Shown: piece after piece, positions 5,051 to 31,078 of the stretch
Layout of the letters: every line of letters begins with the position of its first letter
Position numbering within the stretch: position 1 is the stretch's first letter
Virus record (IMG/VR): IMGVR_UViG_3300023083_000001
Location: 186,001 to 250,000 of that record
Reading direction: 5' to 3' (one strand)
DNA length: 64,000 nt
Program-made: the position numbers and the translations under genes
The notes under the pieces: model-generated
The model's input: only the letters and a program-made list of their open reading frames with translations
What the model was told of the DNA's origin: nothing
The model's database searches: none

Positions 5051-5884
5051 TCACCACTTAGGCTTACTGCCGAGTGATAACTTCAAGACCTTACGGTACT
5101 TTTCGGTATCGTTAAGTAATGCAATCTTGGTCCAGGTCGTAGAAAGGTAATCGTAGTACAGCTGGTTTGAATCAGCGTACTGGTCGGTGATCTCACGGAT
5201 ACGACCCAGACTCATACCTGCGCGGATTTGACCTTCATCCATGTCTACCACCAGGGTGTTGTGAATATGCGCTTTGGCTGCATAGACGACAAGCTGACTG
5301 AAGTTGTGGTAGTAGGCTGGTTTGATGTCGTTGAAGTTCGGTTCATGAGCCAACGTACAACGCAGGACCGCATCACCGATTATCTGGTTCATGTCGTTGA
5401 CCAGGATCGTGTTAATCCCAACCAATTGAACGTAGGAAGACCCCACCGACTGAACACCTGATGTACTGCGGATAATCTGTCGAGCAATCGACAGCATGTT
5501 GTTGGTATTGGAAGGAGTAATCCCACCACCAGCCCATGATCCCGTTGTGTAGCCGTAGTTGAGTTCGTGAGCGGAGATAATCCGACGACCACCTGTGGCT
5601 TCTCGCGGGAAACGATAGACCATGTTCCAACCATCGACCATCTCAAGCTCAGCCATCATGAGAGGCAGGTACATTTCTGTACCACCAACCAGGTTGACAT
5701 CGACTGCTACACGGCCTTCAATCACGTGTAGTCTGATCTGCTCATCGATTGAGGTGGTGGATACGTTGTCAAAGTAACGATCCCGCCGAGTCGGGTCGTA
5801 ACGTTTGGGCATGAAGGCTTGATCCAGAAGGTCCCTCGGAACTTCAGCTTTAACCCGCATGATTGCAACTTGTACTGGATCCAT
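5051..5884 (-). CDS. Conserved jumbo-phage protein, probably virion structural
   Basis: 277 aa, GGAGGA RBS, divergent from phuZ. Confidence 0.65.
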   Translation of the reverse strand: MDPVQVAIMRVKAEVPRDLLDQAFMPKRYDPTRRDRYFDNVSTTSIDEQIRLHVIEGRVAVDVNLVGGTEMYLPLMMAELEMVDGWNMVYRFPREATGGRRIISAHELNYGYTTGSWAGGGITPSNTNNMLSIARQIIRSTSGVQSVGSSYVQLVGINTILVNDMNQIIGDAVLRCTLAHEPNFNDIKPAYYHNFSQLVVYAAKAHIHNTLVVDMDEGQIRAGMSLGRIREITDQYADSNQLYYDYLSTTWTKIALLNDTEKYRKVLKLSLGSKPKW

Positions 5885-5967: not shown

Positions 5968-6960
5968 ATGTCTGATCTTATCGCTGCACGTACCCGTACT
6001 CTTCGTTTCATCGCTTGCGGCGGCACCGCGATTAACTTGCTGCGTAACTATCGTGACAATAAGCCGAAAGATTCTGATGCGTTGTCAGAAGAGCACTACA
6101 GCTATGTCGATACTTCGATCGCTAACCTCAAAGGTGTGTCGAACGACGAAGTGTATCTGCTGCAAGGCGTGGACGGTTCGGGTTCCGATCGTCCGAAGAA
6201 CGCCAAGGCCATCAAGACTGCGTTGCCTGAAATCATGGTCAAGCACGGCGCCGCTGATTTCAACATCGTGATCTTCTCGGCAGCAGGCGGCACTGGTTCG
6301 GTTGCAGGTCCAATGATCTTGGAACACCTGCTGGGTGACAAGAAGAACGCCATCGCAATCGTGATCGGCAGTCACGACAGCCTCAAGCGCACTACCAACA
6401 CCATCGGCACGCTACAAGGTCTGGAAGCCGCCGTGGCCCGTCTGGGTCGTCCCATCGTAATGCACTACAAAGAAAACGAACTGGACAAACCACATGCGGT
6501 CAACAACCGTGGTCCTCAGTTCGTGATGCAGACCGTGTCCATGCTGACCTCCGGCAAGAACGATCACCTGGACAGTGCAGACGTCAACAACCTGTTCAAC
6601 TTCCACACGGTTACACACCATGCGCCATCCCTGGCGATGTTGAACGTTTACGCAAACGCAGAACAACTGACCGAGAAAGTCAAAGCACCCATCGCGTTCG
6701 CCGCTTTGGTGCGTGACAGCGAAGAAGTAGTCCCTCAGCTCGGCCCGGATTACGACACTGTCGGTTATCTGCCATCGTCCAAGACCGCATACGACAACTC
6801 GTTCTACTTCGTGGTGACCACCGACGCATTGGCCGGCGTGTTCACTGAACTGAACAGTAAGCGTGAAAACGCAACCAAGCAGCAGAAAGTCCAGGCCAAG
6901 ACCACCAGTCTGTTGGGTGGCGACACCAAGCATGACGAAGACACCGGCCTGGTGTTCTAA
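5968..6960 (+). CDS. phuZ: PhuZ tubulin-like spindle protein
   Basis: FIACGGTAIN, GxDGSG and AAGGTGS tubulin/FtsZ signatures; acidic-hydrophobic C-tail DEDTGLVF. Confidence 0.95.
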   Translation: MSDLIAARTRTLRFIACGGTAINLLRNYRDNKPKDSDALSEEHYSYVDTSIANLKGVSNDEVYLLQGVDGSGSDRPKNAKAIKTALPEIMVKHGAADFNIVIFSAAGGTGSVAGPMILEHLLGDKKNAIAIVIGSHDSLKRTTNTIGTLQGLEAAVARLGRPIVMHYKENELDKPHAVNNRGPQFVMQTVSMLTSGKNDHLDSADVNNLFNFHTVTHHAPSLAMLNVYANAEQLTEKVKAPIAFAALVRDSEEVVPQLGPDYDTVGYLPSSKTAYDNSFYFVVTTDALAGVFTELNSKRENATKQQKVQAKTTSLLGGDTKHDEDTGLVF

Positions 6961-6983: not shown

Positions 6984-7012
6984 TACATAGGGCGGAAACG
7001 CCCTATGTATGC
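6984..7012 (+). terminator. CATA/TATG hairpin after phuZ
   Basis: TACATAGGGCG-GAAA-CGCCCTATGTA, perfect 11-bp stem. Confidence 0.7.
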
Positions 7013-7039: not shown

Positions 7040-7252
7040 ATGACTAACATGATGTTTGTTTGCGACACCTGTAACAACGTAGATAGTTTACGTGTGAGTA
7101 GTAGTAACCACGAAGGCTTCAAATGTTATCGCTGCCAACACGGTCACTGGCACGGGCTATTCCCGGAAGAAACCTACGACCCGTATCAGCACTTTGTTGA
7201 GAACCGGGTAAACCGAAACTTTAACGAGCATGGAGAACCGTCATTTGGTTAA
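7040..7252 (+). CDS. Small zinc-ribbon protein
   Basis: CDTC...CYRC pairs in 70 aa. Confidence 0.65.
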   Translation: MTNMMFVCDTCNNVDSLRVSSSNHEGFKCYRCQHGHWHGLFPEETYDPYQHFVENRVNRNFNEHGEPSFG

Positions 7253-7424
7253 TACCTCGAAAGAAATTCGTAGGGAGTCTGTGACTCCCTGTAGTCGGAT
7301 TTTCTTTTGTAGCTTATAGATTCATCGTCGAAAGGACGAACGAGGCGTCTACATGCACTACAGGAGCTTACGACCGTATTTACTTACAAAATGGCCTAAT
7401 CATGTACAGAGGTTGAGGTCAACT

Positions 7425-7793
7425 ATGCAAGACACCCCATTCTACATCGTGGACATATCGGAGTTGATTAACCGAGTGTCCCGAGGTGACCGGTTCCCAC
7501 CGGCGATATACGAAACGTGGATAGCTAATAAGTACACTAAAAACTGGGGTGTTCCATGTGTCAGTACCACGTTACTGGACATGGACCCAACGAGCATAAG
7601 AACGTTCTCGGGTAACCGGGAGCAAATTGTAATGAACGCACAAGAGCAAGGCGTGAATCCGATAGACTTTCTACCGGCACCTGATCAATTGTGGCATGAT
7701 GAACGCGGCATATGGCTGCTTGTAAAAGATAGCTATCTGCTGATGGGAGACGGCCGTGCAATTAAGAAACTGTGGCGAAATCTGTATTCTTGA
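7425..7793 (+). CDS. Hypothetical protein, array member 1
   Basis: GAGGT RBS before ATG 7425; FYIVDISEL motif. Confidence 0.7.
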   Translation: MQDTPFYIVDISELINRVSRGDRFPPAIYETWIANKYTKNWGVPCVSTTLLDMDPTSIRTFSGNREQIVMNAQEQGVNPIDFLPAPDQLWHDERGIWLLVKDSYLLMGDGRAIKKLWRNLYS

Positions 7794-8208
7794 TACTAAT
7801 GAGATCGTTGCTTCAGCATTCAGGGATCTGAAGAAGCATAATGAACATCTGGACCGAGCGGACCGGGAACATCTGACAAACGTGATCGCCGATATCTTTG
7901 ACGACCACATCACCGTCAACATGTACTGGACCAAGACAGGGACTCATCCAGATGCGGACCGTTATCTTGATAAGCTTGAAAAACTCATCAAGAAGCATCC
8001 AAGGTCTTACGAACTGATTGAAGATATCCGCGACAAGATCGACGAGTTATTGATGAACGTGGTGAGGCTGCCGACTTGGCATGAAATACACGTCAGAATC
8101 CGGGGGTCCAATATCCAGTTGGAGTTGGGTCAAGATTACCGAATTACCGACTGGATGAAAACCCATGCTAAGGAATACCGCATCGCCGCTGAAATTCGAG
8201 ACTGGTAG
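7756..8208 (+). CDS. Hypothetical protein, array member 2
   Basis: GGAG RBS before GTG; ICILDTNEI motif. Confidence 0.7.
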   Translation: MQLRNCGEICILDTNEIVASAFRDLKKHNEHLDRADREHLTNVIADIFDDHITVNMYWTKTGTHPDADRYLDKLEKLIKKHPRSYELIEDIRDKIDELLMNVVRLPTWHEIHVRIRGSNIQLELGQDYRITDWMKTHAKEYRIAAEIRDW

Positions 8209-8704
8209 TACCTTGTTGTTGGACATCACCGAATTCCTGACGCGATTCCGAAAGCAGATGGAAGAAGATGAGTGGGATGAGTTCAAACTCATTTGGAGGT
8301 CCAGAGAGATACTGCTCGAGTTCGCCCGTAACCTGTACTCCAGAGAAGAATCGATCTACGGCACTGCCAAGAACATCGCGGGTAGTCGTAAGTGTTTTCT
8401 TAACTGGTTGTGTTTGGGGAGCGAGTTGGACTTTGCAGTGCGTGAACATCTGTTGGATAACGCACCGGAAGGTTCGGTCGTGACAGAGATTGATCTGGTC
8501 TTTGACAAACCCCACCTACTCATTAGACATCATGTCCCGAGAACTGAAGATGAACCAGGATTTGAAAGATATATTGAAAGATGCCGTCGGGAAGGGGAAA
8601 CTATCCATCCAGAAGTCGACAAGCAATTGCGCTTCTTCCGATCTCTTGGATCGCCCGGAGCATTCGTACTTGATCGTCGACGTTACCGGTCTCCAATTGA
8701 CTAA
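8165..8704 (+). CDS. Hypothetical protein, array member 3
   Basis: 179 aa; TLLLDITEF motif. Confidence 0.65.
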   Translation: MLRNTASPLKFETGSTLLLDITEFLTRFRKQMEEDEWDEFKLIWRSREILLEFARNLYSREESIYGTAKNIAGSRKCFLNWLCLGSELDFAVREHLLDNAPEGSVVTEIDLVFDKPHLLIRHHVPRTEDEPGFERYIERCRREGETIHPEVDKQLRFFRSLGSPGAFVLDRRRYRSPID

Positions 8705-8990
8705 GGTCAGCGATGAAGTGTTGGTTGATCAGGGGGTTATTCTCAGAGCAGCCTTGTTGTACGAGTTTTACGATGTTGATACAGAGTGGAAGGCGTTGTG
8801 CGCCAAGACGCCTCCAGATTGTGATGAGATGTTCGATGTGGAAGAAACACTGAACACCTGGTTCTCCAATCAGATAGAAGGTATCAGTCTGCGGTTTGAG
8901 TTCATTACCGCGATGAGGCCTTACTATCCATCGGATGTTGTGGTGATGGGTGACTTTGTATTAATCGAAATGACTGAAGGCGAAGACTGA
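8550..8990 (+). CDS. Hypothetical protein, array member 4 (start uncertain)
   Basis: YLIVDVTGL motif; overlaps upstream gene by ~155 nt. Confidence 0.6.
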   Translation: MNQDLKDILKDAVGKGKLSIQKSTSNCASSDLLDRPEHSYLIVDVTGLQLTKVSDEVLVDQGVILRAALLYEFYDVDTEWKALCAKTPPDCDEMFDVEETLNTWFSNQIEGISLRFEFITAMRPYYPSDVVVMGDFVLIEMTEGED

Positions 8991-8998
8991 GGTGTTTG

Positions 8999-9457
8999 AT
9001 GAGTCGTGATGACGATACTGTCGATTTATATACACCGGCTCATCCACGATTACCTTTACGGGTAGGCGGTCGAGAACCGGTGTTGATGAGGATCGATACT
9101 GAGATAGCCGTTGCAGTGCAGAGTCTGACCGACTACTTCGATATATCGAAACACAACAACGTAATAGAAGGAACATTCAGTATCCTCCTGATAGCTTTGT
9201 TGCTTGAGCAAAGTGACGATGCGGTGGATGCGTTTGAAAGGATTATTACGCAGAATAGAGTCAAACCCAGGATGGACGCTGACAAACTCTGGGGTGAATT
9301 CATGACCCTGATCTCGTTTTTCATCGATGTGTATGAAAACGATACGGTGTTGTTGGAAGAGCTGGAGATTTTATTACCCAGCGAAGTGCGTATTTTCCCT
9401 GAAGAAATATTTCAAGTCCGCTGGTCCAAAGGCGGCGACTACTTACTGATACAATAG
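8999..9457 (+). CDS. Hypothetical protein, array member 5
   Basis: GAGGT RBS; LMRIDTEI motif. Confidence 0.7.
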   Translation: MSRDDDTVDLYTPAHPRLPLRVGGREPVLMRIDTEIAVAVQSLTDYFDISKHNNVIEGTFSILLIALLLEQSDDAVDAFERIITQNRVKPRMDADKLWGEFMTLISFFIDVYENDTVLLEELEILLPSEVRIFPEEIFQVRWSKGGDYLLIQ

Positions 9458-9465
9458 GAGGCGGT

Positions 9466-9879
9466 GTGAACAACCCACAGCTATTCATCGTCCCCATCGA
9501 TAGACAGATGGTGGTGAGTCTTGGAACTGTCTGCAATCACCTACATTCTACTCACGACCTGTCGTTCGAATCTCTGGACAGTATCCAACATGCGTTCATC
9601 GTAGCGTTGGCTGAATACTGGATCATGAGTGATTGGACAGGTCTGGAGTTCTTCCTTGAGTGTCTCAAGGAGTTGGAAGACGGGATGCTTAAAAGTCTGT
9701 GCGAAGTAATGATCAGACAGATGGCCGATGGCGATGTCCGGTACTACCCAAGGATGCGCGATGGGATCTACTCTCTGAAAGATGAGACCAAGTACATCAC
9801 TCGTGGTTTTTACATCCAGGAAGGTAAAGTGGATGCTAGATCTCGCGCGCTGGCAGTTACGATTAGTTATGCAAAGTAA
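9466..9879 (+). CDS. Hypothetical protein, array member 6
   Basis: AGGAGG RBS before GTG. Confidence 0.7.
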   Translation: MNNPQLFIVPIDRQMVVSLGTVCNHLHSTHDLSFESLDSIQHAFIVALAEYWIMSDWTGLEFFLECLKELEDGMLKSLCEVMIRQMADGDVRYYPRMRDGIYSLKDETKYITRGFYIQEGKVDARSRALAVTISYAK

Positions 9880-9891
9880 TTCGAGGGCAAC

Positions 9892-10245
9892 ATGATTGAA
9901 CATGAGCGCTATGTATTGTCGATCCAACCCTGCCATGGCGTTACTGATGACGCCATGGCGTCTATGCTGTCAAGCTGGGTAACGGGTACAGTTCACTCGC
10001 AACAATGGCTGACCCAAGATGCTATCCATGCGTTAATTACTAACCATCCGCTCAAAGGTTGTGATATCGAGAAGATGGCAGTGAGCGTACTGGATGCATT
10101 GGACGGTTGCGGTCTTTACAGTCACCTGCTGATGAAAGTCGAGGATTTGGATCTGGTGACCTGTCAAGTCAAAGGTAACCTGGCGTACCTGGAACTGGAG
10201 TGGAAGAAGCGAAATGAATCTGCCTATAGTTACCCAACAGCGTAG
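9892..10245 (+). CDS. Hypothetical protein, array member 7
   Basis: GAGGG RBS, 117 aa. Confidence 0.7.
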   Translation: MIEHERYVLSIQPCHGVTDDAMASMLSSWVTGTVHSQQWLTQDAIHALITNHPLKGCDIEKMAVSVLDALDGCGLYSHLLMKVEDLDLVTCQVKGNLAYLELEWKKRNESAYSYPTA

Positions 10246-10588
10246 AAAGCCGATCATCTTTTCGTTAAGAGATGATAAGCTCAATCGGTTCATCTCAACG
10301 ATTGATCTGGATAACCATCTTCGAATCCTGGCGGGAATGTTAGAGGACTTCGTTCCACTGTTCCCGTTCTCCACCTTCATGCTGGATTGGCCGCCATCCA
10401 AGATGTACCTCAAAGGGGCGGCTAAGGATTCCCCACTCAAAACCCTGTACGATGTTTTACAGGGACACTTATCCGAGAGTGGCTACCCAGTCACTGTACT
10501 CAGCACCATGGTGGTCCTGCATCATGAACCGTTCGACACCACCCTCATCGAAGCCTCGAGTACAGCTCGAGTCTGTTCTCTGCACTAA
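10214..10588 (+). CDS. Hypothetical protein, array member 8
   Basis: 124 aa, overlaps both neighbours. Confidence 0.6.
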   Translation: MNLPIVTQQRRKPIIFSLRDDKLNRFISTIDLDNHLRILAGMLEDFVPLFPFSTFMLDWPPSKMYLKGAAKDSPLKTLYDVLQGHLSESGYPVTVLSTMVVLHHEPFDTTLIEASSTARVCSLH

Positions 10589-10955
10589 CTCCGAATACGT
10601 CGTTATTGAAATCACCCGTGAAGTCAGGCGTTTCATCGACGCGGTTGATGGTTACGTGGAAGACCTCAGCTACAACATCGAAGGGATCATCAAAGCCTAC
10701 AACCATTACCGCCACAGGAAGACCAACATCCGTGACCTAGATGACCTGGTTCCTGAGCTGCTGCATTCAAGCTTCGTCAAGAACGTAGAAGATGCAGAGA
10801 AGATTGCCAGCATAGCGCTTTACACATTCTACCCAGATATTGCAGCTGCGATTGTAGCCCATGGGTATTCCGCTGGACTTATCCATATGGTGAAAGTTCA
10901 CACAACCCGTGATACACGTATGTCAAGTTGCGTATTGCTGCTGAAAGTTATCTAA
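10524..10955 (+). CDS. Hypothetical protein, array member 9 (start uncertain)
   Basis: YVVIEITREV motif. Confidence 0.6.
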   Translation: MNRSTPPSSKPRVQLESVLCTNSEYVVIEITREVRRFIDAVDGYVEDLSYNIEGIIKAYNHYRHRKTNIRDLDDLVPELLHSSFVKNVEDAEKIASIALYTFYPDIAAAIVAHGYSAGLIHMVKVHTTRDTRMSSCVLLLKVI

Positions 10956-10964
10956 CCGGAGAAG

Positions 10965-11303
10965 ATGATGTCAAAACCATGTATCGTGGGTTACTGCCCC
11001 GAACTCTACGATGCTCTCCAGACGGTGGCGCATCAAGTACTCCCTTACGAACCAATTGACGAGTGGCCACCCCACGCTCGCCAATACAATGAAGAAGACC
11101 GGGACAAGCTGATCCGTCAGTTACTCCTAGGTCTTACAGATTCCGAAAAGTGTGACAGGGAACTGGAACACTACATCAACGTCCTCTTCGAGTCGATCAG
11201 CGATGATACCTTGAGGGGGTTGATCGAATTTGGCGCCATCGAGAAACTGATCATCAACGATCGCGGCTATTATTTGGCCGTTGAAGGGGTAAGCTTTTTA
11301 TGA
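10965..11303 (+). CDS. Hypothetical protein, array member 10
   Basis: GGAG RBS; ATGA coupling to next gene. Confidence 0.7.
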   Translation: MMSKPCIVGYCPELYDALQTVAHQVLPYEPIDEWPPHARQYNEEDRDKLIRQLLLGLTDSEKCDRELEHYINVLFESISDDTLRGLIEFGAIEKLIINDRGYYLAVEGVSFL

Positions 11304-11692
11304 AACTCATTTCCACCAACATCGGCAAGACGATGACGTTCCAAACGTTTTCAGGTATCAAGTACAGCAACCAGAAATTGGTCGCTCTGCTTGACGCCAC
11401 GACGGTTGAAGCGTTAGGTCAGGATCCTATCGCAGGTCATATCCAAAACCTGCCGTACATGAAGGATCCAAAGCCGGGTGCCTACACCGATTACCTGTAC
11501 GCCAAGTTCACTGACGCTGACGGTACTCCTCTGTACCTCGGCATCCCGTGGACGGATGAAGATTCCATTGTTCAGAACACTACGCCCAACTACGTCATCA
11601 CGTTGGTCGGTCCTGAACAAGCGCAGGTTGACTCGTTGAAGTCCATGATGATCGCCAATGGCATCGAGAACTTCACGATCAAAGCCGTATGA
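11300..11692 (+). CDS. Conserved phiKZ-like protein (gp49-like by position)
   Basis: Directly upstream of the polymerase subunit; Y..Y.Y...LGIPW motif. Confidence 0.6.
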   Translation: MKLISTNIGKTMTFQTFSGIKYSNQKLVALLDATTVEALGQDPIAGHIQNLPYMKDPKPGAYTDYLYAKFTDADGTPLYLGIPWTDEDSIVQNTTPNYVITLVGPEQAQVDSLKSMMIANGIENFTIKAV

Positions 11693-11810: not shown

Positions 11811-13973
11811 ATGGCCGCATTGACTAACCCATTCCTTCTTCCGGTTGAGCAGTATCAACGGGACATCGATATCAAGAAAGGTTATCTCCAACAAGTTGCT
11901 AAGTATCTGTCCTGCGCGCTGAAGAAGCCGTACAAGCAATGTCTGGAGTTTGTACTCAACGAAGTGAAGGACCGCAACAGCGAGTTCCGCTTCCGTGATC
12001 CAAAGATGTTGCAGTTGATCCGCAAAGGGGTTGGTGAGCGAGTTCAGGACGAAACTACCTTTCTGGATTACGTTGACGCTATTATCGACACCGGTCGTAT
12101 TGTTTCCCCCTCGCTTGTGGTCTACGAGCGTCCTGAGGTTGAGAAGTCTGTAACCGCTGAATGGCAAGATGAGAACATCAAAGCTCGTAAGCGTTCAAAG
12201 ACTGCAATGTTTGAATTGAAACAACTCGGCGAATTGATGAAGTCGGCTTTGGCTGACTATGACCAGAACGCCCGTAAGATCCGTATCAACTCCGTGTCGG
12301 GTATGCGCGGCTTTGAAGGTAACCCACTGTTTCTGGCATCGGGTCACTCCAGCCTGACATCGATGTGTCGTGCTGCTGCTGGGTACGGTAACGGTACGGT
12401 TGAGCGTTTCCTGGCAGGCAGTCGTCATTATCACACGCCAGAGATTGCCAAAGCTAACATCATGGCCATGATCACCATCGAAGACAAAGCTCGTTTCCTG
12501 GCTGTGATCTCCCGCTACAACCTGGTGTATCCAACAGTTGAAGATGTGGTTTCGATGATCCGTCGGTCTACCGACCTGTACTGGGAAACTCCAGACGAGA
12601 TGGATCTGATCGAAGAGATGGTCAAAGGCATGGATCAACTGGAACGGGCTATCGTCTGTTATTCAGGCGACATGTTCCACTTGGCTAAACTCAATCCAGA
12701 GATTGTGCGCGAGTTGTTTGGCGAGATGATTGCCATCAACATCGAAGACATGGATGACGTGGACACTGCGGCTATCCTCAAAGGTCTGGACAGTACAGAG
12801 AAAGCGTACATCAACGCCCTGTGTGCTAACGTGCTTAAAGGTACGACCCTCAAACAAGTCCAGGCAAACAATCCAGCGGGCTGGCAGACGATCGGCAAGA
12901 CAGCCCAACGCTTTATATGGGCCTGTCAGAAGTATCATCAGCTAATCAATACACTGTTCGCTCCGATGCACTTGCCGCCCACTGTGGCGTCTTTGAGAAG
13001 CATCCAGCGCCGTGTCTGTCTGGCAGCTGATACTGACTCCTCTATCTTCACTACTGAGTATTGGGTGGAGTGGTACACCGGACATCTGAAACGCGGAGAA
13101 GTCGAAGACCGCATTTGGTATCTGGCGACTTACATGGTTTGTCAGTGCATTGCTCACTCACTCGCCATGTTGTCTGCTAACGTTGGTGTTGAGCGTTCAC
13201 AGATCTTCCGTCTGGCCATGAAGAACGAGTATGCGTTCCCGCAGTTCGCACTCACCAACTTGGCTAAGCACTACTATTCTACCATGTCGATGCGTGAAGG
13301 TAACGTATACGACGAGTTGGAGTTGGAGATCAAAGGTGTGGAGCTACGTGGGTCAACGGTACCTAAGCACATCTTGAAAGCTGCCGAAGACCTGATGCGC
13401 AATACTTTGCACGCTATTGACCGGGGTGAGAAACTCAACGCCGGCAAGGTATTGGCATTGGTAGCAAGTTATGAATTGGACACGGTGAAGTCGATCAAGC
13501 GCGGGGAATACACTTACCTGCGCAGTGCTCAGATCAAACCTGACAGTCCGAAGATGCCGTACCACGAACTGTGGCAGGATGTGTTTGGTCCTAAATACGG
13601 CATGAGTATCAACCCACCGTACCCATGTGTGAAAGTCACTACTGAACTGGGCAACAAAACCCAACTCAAGGAATGGCTGGACAACATGGAAGATAAAGAG
13701 CTGGCTGGCCGTATGGCAGCATGGCTCATCAAGTACAACCGTAAGGACCTGCCAACTGTCTTCTTGCCAACCATGGCGATCAAAGGCAAAGGTCTTCCTC
13801 TGGAGATTCAAGATGCTGCGAATGTTCGTAAACTGGCCTACCAGATCAACTCCGGTTTCTATCGCATCCTCGAATCCATGGGTCTACACATCGTCGACCG
13901 CAACAACTATCGACTGGTGTATGACTTTCTAAGACTCGACGATTCGGTCGATGCACCGGAGGTGGTTGTATGA
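11811..13973 (+). CDS. Split family-B DNA polymerase, C-terminal catalytic subunit (phiKZ gp50-like)
   Basis: Motif B QxxxKIRINSVSG, motif C AADTDS, KHYY and EIKGVE. Confidence 0.9.
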   Translation: MAALTNPFLLPVEQYQRDIDIKKGYLQQVAKYLSCALKKPYKQCLEFVLNEVKDRNSEFRFRDPKMLQLIRKGVGERVQDETTFLDYVDAIIDTGRIVSPSLVVYERPEVEKSVTAEWQDENIKARKRSKTAMFELKQLGELMKSALADYDQNARKIRINSVSGMRGFEGNPLFLASGHSSLTSMCRAAAGYGNGTVERFLAGSRHYHTPEIAKANIMAMITIEDKARFLAVISRYNLVYPTVEDVVSMIRRSTDLYWETPDEMDLIEEMVKGMDQLERAIVCYSGDMFHLAKLNPEIVRELFGEMIAINIEDMDDVDTAAILKGLDSTEKAYINALCANVLKGTTLKQVQANNPAGWQTIGKTAQRFIWACQKYHQLINTLFAPMHLPPTVASLRSIQRRVCLAADTDSSIFTTEYWVEWYTGHLKRGEVEDRIWYLATYMVCQCIAHSLAMLSANVGVERSQIFRLAMKNEYAFPQFALTNLAKHYYSTMSMREGNVYDELELEIKGVELRGSTVPKHILKAAEDLMRNTLHAIDRGEKLNAGKVLALVASYELDTVKSIKRGEYTYLRSAQIKPDSPKMPYHELWQDVFGPKYGMSINPPYPCVKVTTELGNKTQLKEWLDNMEDKELAGRMAAWLIKYNRKDLPTVFLPTMAIKGKGLPLEIQDAANVRKLAYQINSGFYRILESMGLHIVDRNNYRLVYDFLRLDDSVDAPEVVV

Positions 13974-18193: not shown

Positions 18194-19684
18194 ATGGAAT
18201 TGATTACTCAGGATATCCATGAACCTCGGCAACGGTATCCTGGTCGAAAAGGTATTTACCCCATCATCGAGAACTTCGATGACATCTTTCGTCGTCTAGA
18301 TATCCAGCCCGTGTTGGCTAATGACCTGGATCTGACAACAGATGCCGGTAAAGAACGATTCAATGATCTGGTCTATACGAAGTACGATGGTGACGTGTTC
18401 TCTAACGTTCCCGCTTGTCCATGTCGTTACACCAAAGGTGGTAGCAAGATCCGTCACAAGTGTGTCCGTTGTGGGCACTTAGTTCTACCGATTACCGAAC
18501 AGTCCATCGAACCCATTGTCTGGGTGCGTGTGCCTGACGAACTCCCTGCTTTCATGAACCTGACTGTGTACCGACTACTGCGTGCTCGTTTCACCAAGAG
18601 CGGCTTCAGCGTAATCGACTACATGCTCGACCCGAAATACCGTCCTCCGAAACTGGAAAGTATCGAGGAAAATCTGACCAAAGCAATATGCCCTGTGCGT
18701 GGGATTGTTTATTTCCACAAACACTTCGACAAGATCATCACTGCTCTGTGTGACCTCCGGCACTTTCAGTCGGCGACTCGCGGTGCTGTGACGCTCAAGT
18801 TCGTAGAAGCTCACCGAAAGCTCATATTCTGTAAGTACATTCCGTTCCCTTCCAAGATCGGTTTCATTGTAGAAGATGTCGGCGATCGTAAGTACGTTGA
18901 CCCGAAGATGGCGCCTGCTCTTAATGCGCTGATCTCTCTGGCTAACGTCACCAACGGCGGCCGTTCAGCAGTACGTGACATGGAGAGCCGTGTAGCCCGT
19001 GCCATTGGCAGTCTGGCGAACTACTACTCCAGCAACGAACACAGCAAGATCTTCGATAAGAAAGGTATCTTGCGCAAACTGGTGTATGGGGTAAGTCCAC
19101 ACTTTACCTTCCGTACGGTTATCACCAGTAACCATAAACCTCACGACCATGAATCTCTCGAGACTCCATGGGGTGCAACAGTCCTGACGCTCAAGTTGCA
19201 TTTGGCGAACAAGCTGTTGGCAGAACGTTATACGCCGAATGAAATCCTGACGCTGATCTACGATAACACTCTGCGTACGCACTACAAGCTGGAAGAGCTG
19301 ATCGATATACTGATCGCGGAAAGTCCGGGTGGACGTGGTATTCCGTGTGGCTTTACCCGATTCCCATCGCTGAAACGCGGTTCTACCCAACGGTTCTTCA
19401 TCAACCGGGTGAAACGTGATCCTACAGCGCTGAGTACATCGATTTCGGTATTGACGCTTATTGCGCCGAACGCTGACTTTGATGGCGATTACATGACTGG
19501 ACAACTCTGCCTGGATAACCAGACAGCCAGAGCGTTTGACCGGATGGCGCCGTACACTGGGATCATGGATCTCAAACGCCCATTCCGTGTGGGTAATCAT
19601 GCGTCCATCCCAGCGCCTGTTCTATCGACAATCAATGCCCGTCTAGAAGAGGGTGATGACCTGTCAGTACCTGTGGAGGATTGA
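18194..19684 (+). CDS. rpoC: Non-virion RNA polymerase beta' N-terminal subunit (phiKZ gp55-like)
   Basis: Catalytic NADFDGD; zinc site CPC...CVRC; RFPSL motif. Confidence 0.93.
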   Translation: MELITQDIHEPRQRYPGRKGIYPIIENFDDIFRRLDIQPVLANDLDLTTDAGKERFNDLVYTKYDGDVFSNVPACPCRYTKGGSKIRHKCVRCGHLVLPITEQSIEPIVWVRVPDELPAFMNLTVYRLLRARFTKSGFSVIDYMLDPKYRPPKLESIEENLTKAICPVRGIVYFHKHFDKIITALCDLRHFQSATRGAVTLKFVEAHRKLIFCKYIPFPSKIGFIVEDVGDRKYVDPKMAPALNALISLANVTNGGRSAVRDMESRVARAIGSLANYYSSNEHSKIFDKKGILRKLVYGVSPHFTFRTVITSNHKPHDHESLETPWGATVLTLKLHLANKLLAERYTPNEILTLIYDNTLRTHYKLEELIDILIAESPGGRGIPCGFTRFPSLKRGSTQRFFINRVKRDPTALSTSISVLTLIAPNADFDGDYMTGQLCLDNQTARAFDRMAPYTGIMDLKRPFRVGNHASIPAPVLSTINARLEEGDDLSVPVED

Positions 19685-19685
19685 A

Positions 19686-20303
19686 ATGGCATACCTGCTG
19701 AGCCAGGCCGACAATGACGTCATCCATGCGACGACCCATGGCCTGATTAATAATGACGATCTCGGTTTCTTACGGGAACGTATGAGTTCTACCATGCGGA
19801 CGATGGGGAACTTTGCATCGAAGTATCTGAACGAAGCGCGTGAGAAGTTGGAGAAGTTCGATCTGGGTCGCCTCCGGGATCGAGTGGAAGTCATGCGTGA
19901 TCGTTTCGGTCGTCGATGGGACGAGGATCGTATCCTCGAAGTGGTGGACCTTGGTGGTTTCCAGAATGCCAAGCCTACCATGCGGAAATACATCATGGCT
20001 GAACCAAGAACCCGTCGTCTCTATCACCAGGGACGTTTGGACGGCTATGGTAGTTTGTATCAGGATGACGAACCTGATTGCGTTGGGCGTGAACACACAG
20101 CGTATCGTGAGGTCATGCAAGGCGCATCGGTAGGTGATGAAGAGGAAGACCGCTTCGTGACTTACCTGGGATTGGAGACCGAGGAAGGTCACCCACTATC
20201 CCACGTCGAACGTACGGCAGTCCGTCGTACATGGGCTGAGCAGAAAGCAATCCTGGATCGCGGTAAACAAGATCCAACGAGCCCGCTGCGCAAGACCCTG
20301 TAA
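19686..20303 (+). CDS. Conserved Chimalliviridae core protein (possibly gp59/Imp3-like)
   Basis: GGAGG RBS; MRKYIMAEP..R.LY..GRLDGY motif; the Imp3 link is positional inference. Confidence 0.55.
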   Translation: MAYLLSQADNDVIHATTHGLINNDDLGFLRERMSSTMRTMGNFASKYLNEAREKLEKFDLGRLRDRVEVMRDRFGRRWDEDRILEVVDLGGFQNAKPTMRKYIMAEPRTRRLYHQGRLDGYGSLYQDDEPDCVGREHTAYREVMQGASVGDEEEDRFVTYLGLETEEGHPLSHVERTAVRRTWAEQKAILDRGKQDPTSPLRKTL

Positions 20304-26921: not shown

Positions 26922-27716
26922 ATGGCTGACGACAGAAAACCCCGCAAAGACCCCACAGCGATTGACGACGGCAAACTCAAGCTGTTCGCCAAGCCGTTGA
27001 AAGATGATGGCTCAGCGCGCGCTCCATCCCTGCGGGTGAAGATGATCGAGAACAATCCATGCATCCACGTGGACCTCGGCATCAAGACTGAAGGGCGCAA
27101 CGGTAAAGAAGGCTACCCGATCTCGATCGAAACGCCGATGGAACCTCGTTCTTTCAACATGTTGATGTGCATCATCATGGACGTAGCGGCCGCCAAAGGC
27201 GCCTGCTCGTTGGAAATGGAAAACTGGGGTCACCCATTCCTCTGGAACAAAGATCAGGGTAAGAACGTCCGTTCTCCTGAGCGCATGATCATTTCCCGCT
27301 TCTGCATCTCCAAACGTGACGACGGCATGGTCACCTTCGGCGTTGCTGCTAAAGGCAAGCAGGACGTAACGTTCGAGTTCACTCCGAACGAATTCCACGC
27401 GTTGACTCAGAACGGTCAAGCGGTCGGTGTTTCCATCTCCTCCAAGCTCGCAGCACAAGCCTGGGCCGGTGTCTGGAAAGATCTGTACGTAACACACTTC
27501 GAACGGAACTGGGTAGAACCTGAGTTCATGAAGAAGCGTCGTCTGGAAAACATGCAACGCGCTAATGGCGGTGGCAGCGGCTACAACAGCGCACCTGCTG
27601 GCGGTGGTCAGCAACAGCGTCCACAGCAACAGAACAATTACCAGCAACAACCTACAGCGCCTGCTGGCGGCGGTGGCGTACCTGACTTCGACGTAGGGGA
27701 AGATATCCCTTTCTGA
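26922..27716 (+). CDS. chmC: ChmC-like nucleus-associated RNA-binding protein (phiKZ gp67/Imp6 position)
   Basis: Directly upstream of the sigma-like subunit; beta-rich domain followed by a G/Q/N-rich disordered tail. Confidence 0.65.
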   Translation: MADDRKPRKDPTAIDDGKLKLFAKPLKDDGSARAPSLRVKMIENNPCIHVDLGIKTEGRNGKEGYPISIETPMEPRSFNMLMCIIMDVAAAKGACSLEMENWGHPFLWNKDQGKNVRSPERMIISRFCISKRDDGMVTFGVAAKGKQDVTFEFTPNEFHALTQNGQAVGVSISSKLAAQAWAGVWKDLYVTHFERNWVEPEFMKKRRLENMQRANGGGSGYNSAPAGGGQQQRPQQQNNYQQQPTAPAGGGGVPDFDVGEDIPF

Positions 27717-29494: not shown

Positions 29495-31078
29495 ATGGAA
29501 CTTATCAAACTGTCCTTCGTAGAAGCGGACGGGATGCTCAACCAGGTTATTCGCCCCTATGACCTGGATCAGCGTGGTTCGGCTATCGACCTCTTCTCCA
29601 AAGCCACTGAGAAAGGTTTCAATATCAGCGCTAAACGTTTGGCAGCAGTAGCCGCTCCACTCATGGGTCCGTCTACTCGTCGCAAGATCGACGCGCATAT
29701 CTCCAACGGTTGGGATGCACCCCGCATCATGTTCGCAATGGTGATCGCTACCGGCAACCGTGCCAACAGCAAAGAGTATCACTACATCGTCGGCCACACT
29801 GACGAATCCATGCACACTGTGCGTGGTACCAACGTGCGCTTCGAGAAGCGGATGAAGTTGTATTTCAACAACATCACCCGTATCCACATGACCGAAGCGA
29901 CCTACATGACGCGAGATCGTGGTCATCGTTCGTTGTGGCAACCAAAGATCATCACGCACGATCAGGTGTTGAACCGTAGCGCGATTGAAGGTTTCAACGG
30001 CGGTCGCCGCGAACACCGTAACCGCGCCATGTCTCTTCGTCCAACCGATCTGTTTACACGCCAGGGTGGTGAAACGGCATTCGGTGCGTACTTGACTGAT
30101 AAAGATGTACCTGTCAAGAACCTGTGTGGCGTCTTCAGCGGTCAGTTGCGTTCTTCCACTCGGGAGAATAACAGCTCGACCAACTTCATGCGTCGTAGTC
30201 TCAATGCGTTCGTCAGCTCAGCTGCCGATCCGCAGTCGGCATTCATTGACGACAACCACGACCATGAAACCATGCAGCGTACGATCGACAGCGTGATCGA
30301 GAACAGCATCGATGCCGATCCGTACATCGAACAGATCCGCCGCGATTCCAACATCCTGGAACAAGGGTACATCACGTTCGGCGAACTGATGGACATGAAC
30401 CCAGACTTTGACGAAGACTCGCAGCTTCCGTTCATCCCGCTGGACCGTAACAACCGTAACCGTATCGTGGACAACATCGTTGGCTTCAAATCCGACGAGA
30501 ACGAATCCATTGCTGCGGCCATGATTGCTCACTCTCTGCCAGGCATCCTGATCAACTCGATGTATTCATCGGTTGATAACCTGACCATCACTACACGCGC
30601 GCGCGTCGGTGAGAACAAGTTGCAGTCAGCGTTTCCACATCCGTTTGTTGAAGGCATGTCGATCGCAGCAAGCTGGCCGTACTTCGAAGATCAGATCGAA
30701 AACATCTTGATCCAGGAAGTCAGCAAGGGCGGTCAGTTTGAATTCGATGCCCGCATCGATGCCAACATTGACCAGATGATCAAGATCTGGATCCGCATGG
30801 ACGGCGCGCCTGAGGCGTACTTCGAGTTCCCTGCGTTCTGCGATTCCCTGCTGTCTCCGATGTTGGAAGACAACATGAAGTCGTTCGAAGATCTGTCCAA
30901 GGGTATCGTGGATCTGGCTGGCGATTTGTCCAGGCAGCGTCTGCGTAGTAGTCCATCCGCCGTAGTGGAACCGGTCATCTTGACGGCCACTGAATCCATG
31001 CGCAATACACGTACCGACGGTATTGACCGTGGTGCAAGTCAACCTCGCGCATCCAGTCGTACTGACCGGTCCTGGTAA
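29495..31078 (+). CDS. picA: PicA/Imp1 nuclear import protein (phiKZ gp69-like)
   Basis: 527 aa after the gp68-like gene; RPY, I.NGW...R..F, LRP.D.F and P.F.DSL.SP motifs. Confidence 0.75.
   Translation: MELIKLSFVEADGMLNQVIRPYDLDQRGSAIDLFSKATEKGFNISAKRLAAVAAPLMGPSTRRKIDAHISNGWDAPRIMFAMVIATGNRANSKEYHYIVGHTDESMHTVRGTNVRFEKRMKLYFNNITRIHMTEATYMTRDRGHRSLWQPKIITHDQVLNRSAIEGFNGGRREHRNRAMSLRPTDLFTRQGGETAFGAYLTDKDVPVKNLCGVFSGQLRSSTRENNSSTNFMRRSLNAFVSSAADPQSAFIDDNHDHETMQRTIDSVIENSIDADPYIEQIRRDSNILEQGYITFGELMDMNPDFDEDSQLPFIPLDRNNRNRIVDNIVGFKSDENESIAAAMIAHSLPGILINSMYSSVDNLTITTRARVGENKLQSAFPHPFVEGMSIAASWPYFEDQIENILIQEVSKGGQFEFDARIDANIDQMIKIWIRMDGAPEAYFEFPAFCDSLLSPMLEDNMKSFEDLSKGIVDLAGDLSRQRLRSSPSAVVEPVILTATESMRNTRTDGIDRGASQPRASSRTDRSW

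What the first reader, a model, noticed from the sequence alone, without database searches (positions are those of the whole stretch)
7425..11303. Tandem array of about ten divergent ORFs with a shared architecture: candidate nuclear-import adaptor family
Seen: ten consecutive 110-180 aa ORFs each have a hydrophobic strand leading into a helix near the N-terminus: FYIVDISEL, ICILDTNEI, TLLLDITEF, YLIVDVTGL, LMRIDTEI, LFIVPIDRQ, YVLSIQP, IIFSLRDD, YVVIEITRE, CIVGYCPEL. The first four match well and the later ones weakly. A helical core follows, then a C-terminal beta-hairpin (LLVKDSYLLM, VRIRGSNIQLEL, LVFDKPHLLI, VVMGDFVLIEM, WSKGGDYLLI, QVKGNLAYLEL, IINDRGYYLAV). Known from recall: the equivalent phiKZ interval between phuZ and gp50 contains import factors Imp2 (gp47) and Imp5 (gp48). 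Inference: an expanded paralog family, either cargo adaptors for PicA-mediated import or subunits of one heteromeric complex.
Basis: partly seen in the sequence, partly recalled or inferred. Interest (0 to 1): 0.75.

Follow-up and report, generated by a model that had tools for sequence, protein, structure and literature searches.

The report
Conserved small-protein gene array, jumbo phage
Ten tightly packed small genes between the tubulin and DNA polymerase genes of an uncultivated nucleus-forming jumbo phage are real and conserved, appear to share one phage-specific protein fold, and occupy the position where phage phiKZ encodes two cargo-specific nuclear-import adaptors; their function remains untested.

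Summary
The ten ORFs (7425-11303, + strand) are real genes. Each has about 20 collinear orthologs in related uncultivated chimallivirus contigs, and dN/dS is 0.05-0.4. The window is a 258-kb metagenomic chimallivirus with no close cultured relative.

The proposed architecture (N-terminal strand, helix, helical core, C-terminal hairpin) is confirmed by AlphaFold2 for o1 and o10. Both models have strand 6-10 and a helix starting at residue 12. A left-out motif test supports it for o1, o2, o3 and o9. For the rest there is only crude evidence.

No pair of members is significantly similar on its own; every HHalign probability is under 20%. Pooled, array-versus-array profile scores far exceed controls, mostly in the expected register.

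The fold matches nothing in PDB, AFDB or ESM Atlas. It matches only small chimallivirus proteins in BFVD, including likely positional counterparts.

The array is syntenic with phiKZ gp43-gp48. o2 is homologous to gp43.

The import-adaptor reading rests on synteny and weak fold hints. A PicA complex prediction gave no answer. Verdict: a diverged tandem family is likely; an adaptor function is plausible but unproven.

The parts
5968..6960 (+). phuZ (phage tubulin); upstream boundary of the conserved block
   Evidence: phrog_4733, E 2e-83. tblastn to PhuZ of 209 phages at 35% identity or less.
7040..7252 (+). up70: 70-aa Cys-rich (CxxC...CxxC) protein. Conserved flank, not a family member.
   Evidence: Orthologs in all related contigs and in DT01 gp133. 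No similarity to array members.
7425..7793 (+). o1, 122 aa. Strand FYIVD (6-10), hairpin IWLLVK/YLLMG, C-terminal helix.
   Evidence: AF2 pLDDT 88. 18 or more orthologs. Best BFVD hit is a 113-aa protein, E 2e-5, TM 0.62/0.66, matching by length DT01 gp134, the gene just after the up70 homolog.
7756..8208 (+). o2, 150 aa, GTG start, overlaps o1 by 38 nt. Homolog of the N-terminal domain of phiKZ gp43.
   Evidence: hmmsearch to phiKZ gp43 6e-14 and RTH11 gp220 3e-29. HHalign to the gp43 family 97%, E 8e-11. phrog_14023 3e-5.
8165..8704 (+). o3, 179 aa, overlaps o2 by 44 nt. After the hairpin (LVFDKPHLLI) it has a strongly conserved C-terminal tail, about 8558-8644.
   Evidence: Orthologs and alignment. 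HHalign o2-o3 over 72 columns in register, P 0.0013.
8550..8990 (+). o4, 146 aa from ATG 8550. The strand YLIVD starts near residue 40. The first ~155 nt overlap o3 out of frame.
   Evidence: Several orthologs have no start codon within 25 codons upstream of the strand, so the upstream conserved ATG is the likely start. Orthologs.
8996..9457 (+). o5, 153 aa (TTG start). Variable N-terminal tail, strand VLMRID, C-terminal WSKGGDYLLIQ.
   Evidence: Orthologs. dN/dS 0.06-0.14. Only crude secondary-structure support.
9466..9879 (+). o6, 137 aa (GTG start). The least conserved member; absent from one subclade.
   Evidence: 12-16 orthologs; missing in L014, L015, L021, L034, L037 and L038.
9892..10245 (+). 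o7, 117 aa. Strand YVLSI, hairpin QVKGNLAYLEL.
   Evidence: Orthologs. HHalign o4-o7 hairpin to hairpin, P 0.002.
10214..10588 (+). o8, 124 aa, overlaps o7 by 32 nt.
   Evidence: Orthologs. dN/dS 0.11-0.40.
10524..10955 (+). o9, 143 aa, overlaps o8 by 65 nt. Carries the strongest N-terminal motif (YVVIEITRE). Sits two genes upstream of SH3DP, the same position as phiKZ Imp2.
   Evidence: No later start codon precedes the conserved strand. 39 relatives among 1.84 billion representative proteins. HHalign to DT01 gp139 74%, E 3e-5.
10965..11303 (+). o10, 112 aa. Strand CIVGY (6-10), hairpin IEKLII/GYYLAV. Its stop overlaps the SH3DP start (ATGA). Same position as phiKZ Imp4.
   Evidence: AF2 pLDDT 84. 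Best BFVD hit is an Ea35-70 100-aa protein, TM 0.53/0.58, with PhiEaH1 104 aa at TM 0.51/0.54. Sequence.
11300..11692 (+). SH3DP (PF20287; phiKZ gp49 family); downstream boundary of the array
   Evidence: phrog_3235 4e-15. Pfam label on orthologs. Homologs in all eight cultured phages examined.
11811..13973 (+). Divergent family-B DNA polymerase (phiKZ gp50)
   Evidence: phrog_2927 1e-206.
29495..31078 (+). Imp1/PicA homolog, the proposed but untested docking partner
   Evidence: phmmer with phiKZ gp69, 8e-23. 33 homologs.
19653..20303 (+). Imp3 homolog
   Evidence: phmmer with phiKZ gp59, 4e-20.
26922..27716 (+). Imp6/ChmC homolog
   Evidence: phmmer with phiKZ gp67, 6e-7.

Best explanation
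SHOWN. Bases 7425-11303 encode ten real small proteins (112-179 aa) under purifying selection. They form one co-directional, gap-free and often overlapping gene string between phuZ plus a zinc-ribbon-like gene and the SH3DP and DNA polymerase genes of an uncultivated chimallivirus. The string is conserved gene for gene in more than 20 related contigs. It is collinear with the arrays of cultured chimalliviruses: DT01 gp134-140 and phiKZ gp43-48.

LIKELY (about 0.7). The members are very old tandem duplicates of one chimallivirus-specific alpha/beta domain. In that domain an N-terminal strand, usually ending in Asp/Ser and capping the first helix, and a C-terminal hairpin flank a helical core. 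They have diverged past pairwise sequence recognition, and each copy has since been kept as a 1:1 ortholog.

INFERRED (about 0.3-0.35). Like phiKZ Imp2 and Imp4, which are encoded at the equivalent positions, individual members would act as cargo-specific adaptors. Each would bind one or a few phage or host proteins in the cytoplasm through its own variable helical surface and present them to the Imp1/PicA importer on the chimallin shell. This would widen the set of proteins licensed to enter the phage nucleus. The conserved beta elements would be the common scaffold and the variable helices the specificity surface.
For: Real genes:
- Orthologs and collinearity.
- dN/dS 0.05-0.4.

Common fold:
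- The AF2 models of o1 and o10 have the same plan, with the strand at residues 6-10 and the first helix from residue 12.
- 12 of their top-50 BFVD targets are shared, nearly all small chimallivirus proteins. PhiEaH1 W8CZW2 matches both at TM 0.45-0.54.
- The N-terminal motif is recovered in left-out tests for o9, o1, o2 and o3.
- Pooled HHalign excess over controls, in the expected register.
- An extra member in one subclade has the same motif and hairpin, and o6 is lost in another subclade, consistent with gain and loss of members in a tandem family.

Ancient positional conservation:
- o2 matches phiKZ gp43 at 97%.
- o9 matches DT01 gp139 at 74%.
- The best o1 and o10 hits in DT01 are their positional counterparts.

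Adaptor idea:
- Imp2 is orf47 and Imp4 is orf48, in the same interval of phiKZ. Papers 10.1101/2024.03.27.586873 and 10.64898/2026.09.21.753271 call them cargo-specific adaptors.
- Neither gene has disruptive transposon insertions in phiKZ (PMC12676376).
- Imp1, Imp3 and Imp6 homologs are present in the window.
- Imp2 homologs appear among weak Foldseek hits of o10.
- By eye, Imp2 (SFVVINISDIW ... IQSIAVDQHNQGYILEG) and Imp4 (RVFIVF ... HVLITVPMDTKGLFGVVVLL) show the same terminal strand and hairpin pattern.
- Strict retention of all members inside the most conserved chimallivirus gene block argues for a core role in the nucleus-based cycle.
Against: - No pairwise homology between members reaches significance.
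- o5 and o6 have almost no links to the others.
- Eight of ten structures were not modelled.
- The two models could not be superposed directly. Their TM-scores to shared targets are only about 0.45-0.55.
- No sequence or profile link exists between any member and Imp2 or Imp4.
- The N-motif PSSM does not score Imp2 or Imp4 significantly.
- Foldseek TM to Imp2 homologs is only 0.30-0.39.
- The predicted complex of o1, o9 and o10 with PicA gave 'no answer'.
- Overlapping, translationally coupled genes fit subunits of one complex at least as well as independent adaptors.

Confidence: 0.35

Rival explanations
1. The ten proteins are subunits or accessory factors of one multi-protein assembly, made in fixed ratios from a translationally coupled operon. 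The assembly could be a replication- or shell-associated complex working with SH3DP and the DNA polymerase encoded immediately downstream. They would not be independent cargo adaptors.
For: - Gene overlaps of 32-155 nt or gaps of at most 12 nt run throughout the array. The o10 stop overlaps the SH3DP start.
- Similar overlaps occur in the arrays of phiKZ, PhiEaH1 and AH06.
- Nearly all members are co-retained in more than 20 contigs.
- The array sits next to SH3DP, which has been proposed as a polymerase subunit (PMC7824862).
Against: - No interaction evidence of any kind. Inter-member contacts were not scored.
- The Goslar polymerase complex is described as three subunits (DNAP-N, DNAP-C, Rhc). 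The passages read of PMC13648698 name no small array protein among the pull-down partners.
- The two phiKZ genes at equivalent positions have import phenotypes specific to different cargos.
Confidence: 0.2
2. The ORFs are unrelated orphan proteins. The 'strand, helices, hairpin' pattern would be a generic way for about 120 residues to fold, recurring by convergence. The array would be a hot spot where small fast-evolving genes accumulate.
For: - All pairwise HHalign probabilities are under 20%.
- Five of ten members fail the motif test.
- No DNA-level repeats.
- Foldseek similarities to other phage proteins are mostly TM 0.35-0.5.
- The excess of HHalign scores could partly reflect shared secondary-structure class and composition.
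Against: - The pooled excess over deep control families from the same contigs is strong, and 14 of 18 of the alignments are in the expected register.
- Secondary-structure elements of o1 and o10 start at identical residues.
- 12 BFVD targets are shared, against roughly 0.01 expected by my estimate.
- Neither model matches anything in PDB, AFDB or Atlas, so the fold is not a common generic one.
- Genes are stably retained 1:1 rather than turning over.
Confidence: 0.15
3. The array encodes early host-takeover or anti-defence proteins. Each small protein would inhibit a different host factor, and diversification would be driven by an arms race with the host.
For: - The proteins are small, lineage-restricted and fast-evolving. 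Orthologs are often 20-50% identical where PicA is 40-70%.
- Codon-usage scores are weaker than those of neighbouring genes.
- No known domains.
Against: - Anti-defence loci usually vary in gene content between relatives. Here content and order are almost fixed.
- dN/dS is well below 1.
- The locus lies inside the core phuZ - DNA polymerase - chimallin - nvRNAP block.
- The PADLOC library was not searched.
Confidence: 0.15

Closest known systems
phiKZ Imp2 (gp47) and Imp4 (gp48), cargo-specific nuclear-import adaptors
   Same: - Same genomic interval: between phuZ and SH3DP/DNA polymerase. Imp4 is directly upstream of SH3DP like o10; Imp2 is two genes upstream like o9.
- Similar size (127-178 aa).
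- Very fast sequence evolution. Imp4 is found by tblastn only in phages at least 95% identical to phiKZ.
- By eye, the same N-terminal strand and C-terminal hairpin.
- Imp2 homologs appear as weak Foldseek hits of o10.
   Different: - No detectable sequence or profile homology.
- Structural similarity is weak (TM 0.30-0.39).
- An import role for the window's proteins is untested.
phiKZ gp43 family (PhiPA3 gp039, 201phi2-1 gp75, Psa21 gp39, RTH11 gp220; phrog_14023)
   Same: o2 is a true homolog (HHalign 97%, E 8e-11; hmmsearch 6e-14). It has the same N-terminal strand motif (KLIVLDTRHQ vs ICILDTNEI), the same hairpin plus G-x-DYRI motif, and the same place early in the array.
   Different: gp43-type proteins are 305-357 aa, with an extra C-terminal half of about 200 aa that o2 lacks. 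Their function is unknown.
Pseudomonas phage pPa_SNUABM_DT01 gp133-gp141 (a cultured chimallivirus)
   Same: Collinear: gp133 = up70 (1e-27), gp134 ~ o1 (Foldseek E 2e-5, TM 0.62/0.66, identified by length; best HHalign partner), gp139 ~ o9 (HHalign 74%), gp140 ~ o10, gp141 = SH3DP.
   Different: Seven genes rather than ten between the flanks. The middle members cannot be matched one to one. All are annotated hypothetical.
Eukaryotic importin-alpha-type import adaptors (functional analogy only)
   Same: If the hypothesis holds: soluble adaptors that link particular cargos to a common translocation factor.
   Different: No structural or sequence relation. Phage-nucleus cargo is recognised through folded surfaces, not terminal signals (PMC12908238). 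No Ran-like system is known.

Membership tests
   Collinear orthologs for all ten. dN/dS 0.05-0.40. Expression itself was not tested.
   Met for o1 and o10 by AF2. For the other eight there is only a Chou-Fasman profile with Q3 about 0.6.
   No single pair is significant. The motif test is positive for o1, o2, o3 and o9 only. The pooled HHalign excess over controls has p 1e-6 to 4e-9.
   Only two models were allowed and there is no model-versus-model aligner. Indirect evidence: 12 shared BFVD targets, and both models match W8CZW2 at TM 0.45-0.54.
Imp2 (phiKZ gp47) family | Sequence or profile homology to gp47, PhiPA3 gp044, 201phi2-1 gp79 or Psa21 gp42 | tested here: not met
   phmmer finds nothing. 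HHalign of the Imp2 family against every group gives at most 2.2%.
Imp2 (phiKZ gp47) family | Required for import of a specific cargo, and itself imported through Imp1 | not testable with these tools
   Needs genetics and microscopy. The PicA complex prediction gave no answer.
Imp4 (phiKZ gp48) family | Sequence or profile homology to gp48, PhiPA3 gp045, Psa21 gp44 or 201phi2-1 gp80 | tested here: not met
   HHalign of the positional Imp4 family against o10 gives 1.5%, and gp48 against o1 gives 1.5%. Those four proteins do link to each other (83%).
Imp4 (phiKZ gp48) family | Gene immediately upstream of the SH3DP gene (gp49 family) | tested here: met
   o10 ends at 11303 and SH3DP starts at 11300. 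phiKZ gp48 lies directly upstream of gp49.
phiKZ gp43 family / phrog_14023 (applies to o2 only) | Significant profile match over the conserved helix-hairpin-GxDYRI region | tested here: met
   hmmsearch 6e-14. HHalign 97% over 109 columns. PHROG hit 3e-5.
phiKZ gp43 family / phrog_14023 (applies to o2 only) | Full two-part architecture of about 305-357 aa | tested here: not met
   o2 and its orthologs are 147-178 aa and match only gp43 residues about 30-155.

The most novel reading that the evidence does not exclude
The whole phuZ-to-SH3DP gene array of Chimalliviridae, including phiKZ Imp2 and Imp4 and the ten proteins here, is one ancient tandem family built on a virus-specific alpha/beta fold. 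Its members would be a repertoire of cargo-specific adaptors for the PicA/Imp1 importer, so the array would encode the 'address book' that decides which proteins enter the phage nucleus.
Probability: 0.2. Interest if true: 0.8.

Novelty: new variant of a known kind. Interest (0 to 1): 0.55.

Why it matters
How the phage nucleus chooses its cargo is an open question. Only a handful of factors are known: Imp1-7 in phiKZ. The adaptors Imp2 and Imp4 were reported as restricted to Pseudomonas phiKZ-like phages.

This work shows that the interval holding them is a conserved, collinear array of small proteins across distant chimalliviruses. At least some of those proteins share a fold seen nowhere else. 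That turns lineage-restricted orphan genes into a testable family.

It predicts about ten further candidate adaptors per phage. It also points to a cultured phage, DT01 (gp134, gp139, gp140), and to the phiKZ gp43 family as entry points for experiments.

If the array instead forms one complex, it would be an unrecognised core machine of nucleus-forming phages.

Tried and rejected
- Megablast of the region against 50,697 phage records: no match.
- IMG/VR scan with PhuZ alone: nothing.
- Pfam and PHROGs on all ten proteins: only o2 hit phrog_14023.
- All-vs-all BLASTP: nothing significant.
- phmmer against the arrays of eight cultured phages: only o2 and the two flanking genes hit.
- jackhmmer per group: never crossed into another group.
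- Group HMMs against all ORFs of the 258-kb genome: no paralogs elsewhere and no cross-hits.
- Deepening the o1 profile (5.8 billion proteins) and the o9 profile (1.84 billion representatives): did not raise any cross-group HHalign score.
- Imp4 tblastn: only near-identical phiKZ-type phages, so no diverse profile could be built from sequence search. Positional orthologs were used instead.
- Profiles of Imp2, positional Imp4, gp45, gp46 and PhiPA3 gp038 families against o1-o10: no links except gp43 to o2.
- AFDB clusters, ESM Atlas shape search and PDB-wide VIA-align for both models: nothing above noise.
- Protein-language-model look-up for o9: uninformative; the Atlas model has pLDDT 0.40.
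- Complex prediction of o1, o9, o10 and PicA: no answer, so not used as evidence.
- Replisome link: the passages read of the Rhc paper list no array protein among partners.
- Literature search for gp43: nothing.
- Rfam, tRNA, DNA repeats and sigma-70 or terminator scans of the region: nothing relevant.
- A later start for o4 (TTG 8647) was considered and rejected, because several orthologs have no start codon near the strand.

Full report
CONTEXT

The window is bases 186001-250000 of a single 258,357-bp contig. The same contig is JGI metagenome record Ga0247734_1000011. It is a nucleus-forming jumbo phage (chimallivirus). Around the finding lie:
- a DUF7484/phrog_3179 gene (5051-5884, minus strand);
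- phuZ (5968-6960);
- a 70-aa Cys-rich gene (7040-7252);
- the ten ORFs;
- an SH3DP/phrog_3235 gene (11300-11692);
- the divergent DNA polymerase (11811-13973);
- a 217-aa gene;
- a minus-strand gp52-like gene;
- chimallin (16127-18106);
- the nvRNAP beta subunit (18194-19684).

No cultured phage is close. Megablast finds nothing and the best PhuZ identity is 35%.

The gene order is phuZ, then 7-14 small plus-strand ORFs, SH3DP, DNA polymerase, a minus-strand structural gene, chimallin and nvRNAP. The same order is seen in phiKZ, DT01, AH06, RTH11, PhiEaH1, FLC4-4C (as far as the end of its linear record), Proteus phage 10 and Totoro. The finding therefore sits in the most conserved block of chimallivirus genomes and corresponds to phiKZ gp40-gp48.

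ARE THE ORFS REAL?

A search of 5.8 billion proteins with PhuZ gave a graded series of metagenomic relatives, 68% identity downward. Fetching their contigs, plus loci found with an SH3DP alignment, gave more than 20 related arrays.

- Each of the ten ORFs has 12-26 orthologs, always in the same order.
- In several independent close pairs, dN/dS is 0.05-0.40 for every group.

All ten are protein-coding genes under purifying selection.

Gene starts:
- o1 ATG 7425.
- o2 GTG 7756.
- o3 ATG 8165.
- o4 ATG 8550. Several orthologs have no start codon within 25 codons of the conserved strand.
- o5 TTG 8996.
- o6 GTG 9466.
- o7 ATG 9892.
- o8 ATG 10214.
- o9 ATG 10524. No later start precedes its conserved strand.
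- o10 ATG 10965.

Genes overlap by 32-155 nt or are separated by at most 12 nt. The o10 stop overlaps the SH3DP start.

No tRNA, Rfam family, DNA repeat or convincing internal terminator lies in the region.

IS THE SHARED ARCHITECTURE REAL?

Structure models. AlphaFold2 with the ortholog alignments gave confident models for the two proteins I could afford.
- o1 (pLDDT 88, pTM 0.83): E6-10, H12-19, H26-41, E45-47, H48-51, H57-75, H79-82, E96-101, E104-108, H110-121.
- o10 (pLDDT 84, pTM 0.73): E6-10, H12-25, H43-58, H65-77, H81-88, E92-97, E102-107.

The elements begin at the same residues in both.

N-terminal motif test. I built a 16-residue PSSM from nine ortholog groups and scanned the left-out protein against 297 other proteins of the genome.
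- o9, o1, o2 and o3 rank 1, 2, 3 and 8, each at the correct site.
- o4 is found at the right site but scores poorly.
- o5, o6, o7, o8 and o10 are indistinguishable from background.

Four of ten at p of 0.027 or less has a binomial probability of about 1e-4 (my calculation).

Profile-profile comparison. No pair is convincing alone. The best pairs are o1-o9 at 19%, o2-o3 at 18% and o4-o7 at 14%. The distribution is shifted, however.
- 18 of 45 array-array pairs have P<0.05, against 2 of 30 pairs with three deep control families from the same contigs.
- Mann-Whitney gives p 1.3e-6 with those controls, and 4e-9 with nine controls.
- 14 of the 18 alignments pair N-motif with N-motif (offset 0 or -1) or hairpin with hairpin.
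- o5 and o6 contribute almost nothing.

Shared secondary-structure class could inflate this statistic, so I treat it as support, not proof.

A crude Chou-Fasman profile (Q3 about 0.6 against the two models) puts a strand at each proposed N-terminal site.

WHAT DOES THE FOLD RESEMBLE?

In BFVD, the named hits of both models are mostly small uncharacterised proteins of nucleus-forming jumbo phages. These include Noxifer, Psa21, PhiEaH1, Eowyn, Goslar, Moabite, Desertfox, 201phi2-1, RP12, RSL2, EL and Ea35-70. Classifying these as chimalliviruses rests on my own knowledge.

Twelve targets are common to the two top-50 lists. By my estimate, chance would give about 0.01.

The best hits fit positional counterparts by length.
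- o1: a 113-aa protein (E 2e-5, TM 0.62/0.66), the size of DT01 gp134. That gene follows the up70 homolog gp133.
- o10: a 100-aa Ea35-70 protein (TM 0.53/0.58), the size of the gene just upstream of SH3DP in the related AH06. Also a 98-aa protein the size of DT01 gp140.

HHalign agrees independently. The best partner of DT01 gp139 is o9 (58%, rising to 74% with a deeper profile). The best partner of gp134 is o1, and of gp140 is o10.

The array is therefore old, and its positions are conserved well beyond the range of sequence recognition.

The family also shows gain and loss. o6 is absent from one subclade. Another subclade has an eleventh gene between o4 and o5, with the same FLIDLVEA-type N-terminus and a C-terminal hairpin.

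LINK TO KNOWN PROTEINS

o2 is a clear homolog of the N-terminal half of phiKZ gp43 and its relatives: hmmsearch 6e-14, HHalign 97%. The function of that family is unknown.

In phiKZ the interval also encodes Imp2 (orf47) and Imp4 (orf48).
- These are described as cargo-specific import adaptors.
- They lack disruptive transposon insertions.
- By position, o9 corresponds to Imp2 and o10 to Imp4.

I found no sequence link.
- phmmer finds nothing.
- HHalign of an Imp2 family (four phages) and of a positional Imp4 family against every group gives at most 2.2%.
- The N-motif PSSM does not pick out Imp2 or Imp4.

The positive hints are weak.
- Two Imp2 homologs (SL2, 178 aa; PhiPA3 gp044) appear in the o10 Foldseek list at TM 0.30-0.39.
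- Imp2 and Imp4 sequences show by eye the same terminal strand and hairpin.

The window encodes homologs of Imp1/PicA (29495-31078), Imp3 (19653-20303) and Imp6 (26922-27716), so the core importer that adaptors would need is present.

One complex prediction (o1, o9 and o10 with PicA, using alignments) returned 'no answer'. The three runs scored 0.59, 0.01 and 0.21.

INTERPRETATION

I consider three things established:
- the ten genes are real;
- the array is a conserved feature of chimalliviruses;
- at least o1 and o10 share a lineage-specific alpha/beta plan.

I consider it likely (about 0.7) that most members descend from one domain by ancient tandem duplication.

The function is inferred. 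The best-supported idea (about 0.3-0.35) is that members are cargo-specific accessory factors of the PicA/Imp1 import pathway, as Imp2 and Imp4 are. The conserved beta elements would be the scaffold and the divergent helices the specificity surface.

Rival readings:
- A single heteromeric assembly fits the pervasive gene overlaps and the coupling to SH3DP and the polymerase. No interaction data exist, and the passages I read on the polymerase complex name no such subunits.
- Convergent unrelated orphans.
- Host-takeover or anti-defence proteins. This fits poorly with the near-invariant gene content and the core location.

NOVELTY

Nothing in the searchable literature describes this interval as a structurally related family. 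Imp2 and Imp4 were reported as restricted to Pseudomonas phiKZ-like phages. I rate the finding a new variant of a known kind: the phuZ-to-polymerase small-gene interval that holds import adaptors. Interest is moderate, because the key functional claim is untested.

Noticed in passing
window 8550-8704 (motif at about 8558-8644): o3 and o4 overlap out of frame for about 155 nt. The o3 frame here encodes the best-conserved peptide of the whole array (GFERYIERCRREGETIHPEVDKQLRFFRS). The o4 frame encodes a low-complexity N-terminal tail whose apparent conservation may simply follow from o3. Gene callers on related contigs dropped one gene or the other.
   Followed up: partly
window 7040-7252: A 70-aa protein with two CxxC pairs (zinc-ribbon-like), conserved in all related contigs and in DT01 gp133 and RTH11. 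It always lies between phuZ and the first array gene. It shows no similarity to array members.
   Followed up: partly
L012:13054-13395, with equivalents in L017, L018, L019 and L033; also L014, L015, L021, L034, L037 and L038: Array size varies from 9 to 11. One subclade has an extra 113-aa gene between o4 and o5 with the same N-terminal motif (TFLIDLVEA) and a C-terminal hairpin. Another subclade lacks o6 entirely.
   Followed up: partly
L001:15900-16328 (phiKZ NC_004629, record bases about 35899-36327): An ORF of 142 aa, unannotated in this record, lies between gp42 and gp43. It is homologous to PhiPA3 gp038, 201phi2-1 gp74 and Psa21 gp38, occupies the o1 position, and has an N-terminal LYVVDVTRV and a C-terminal hairpin.
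   Followed up: partly
L013 compared with L009: L013 has a more distant PhuZ than L009 (52% vs 67% identity to the window). Yet its array proteins are closer to the window's (for example o1 57% vs 46%, o10 68% vs 61%). This suggests mosaicism or uneven rates around phuZ.
   Followed up: no
window 6984-7009 and 7272-7308: A perfect 11-bp-stem hairpin lies just after phuZ. A GC-rich hairpin (7272-7290) followed by a T-rich tract (7300-7308) lies after the 70-aa gene. These may be transcript boundaries, which would make o1 through SH3DP one transcription unit.
   Followed up: no
window 7425-11303 compared with neighbours: The array genes have markedly lower codon-usage log-odds per length than neighbouring genes (about 15-27 vs 36-54 for similar sizes). 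A simple codon-based gene caller missed o1, o3 and o8.
   Followed up: no
window 19653-20303, 26922-27716 and 29495-31078: Homologs of the phiKZ import factors Imp3, Imp6/ChmC and Imp1/PicA lie within 20 kb downstream of the array.
   Followed up: partly
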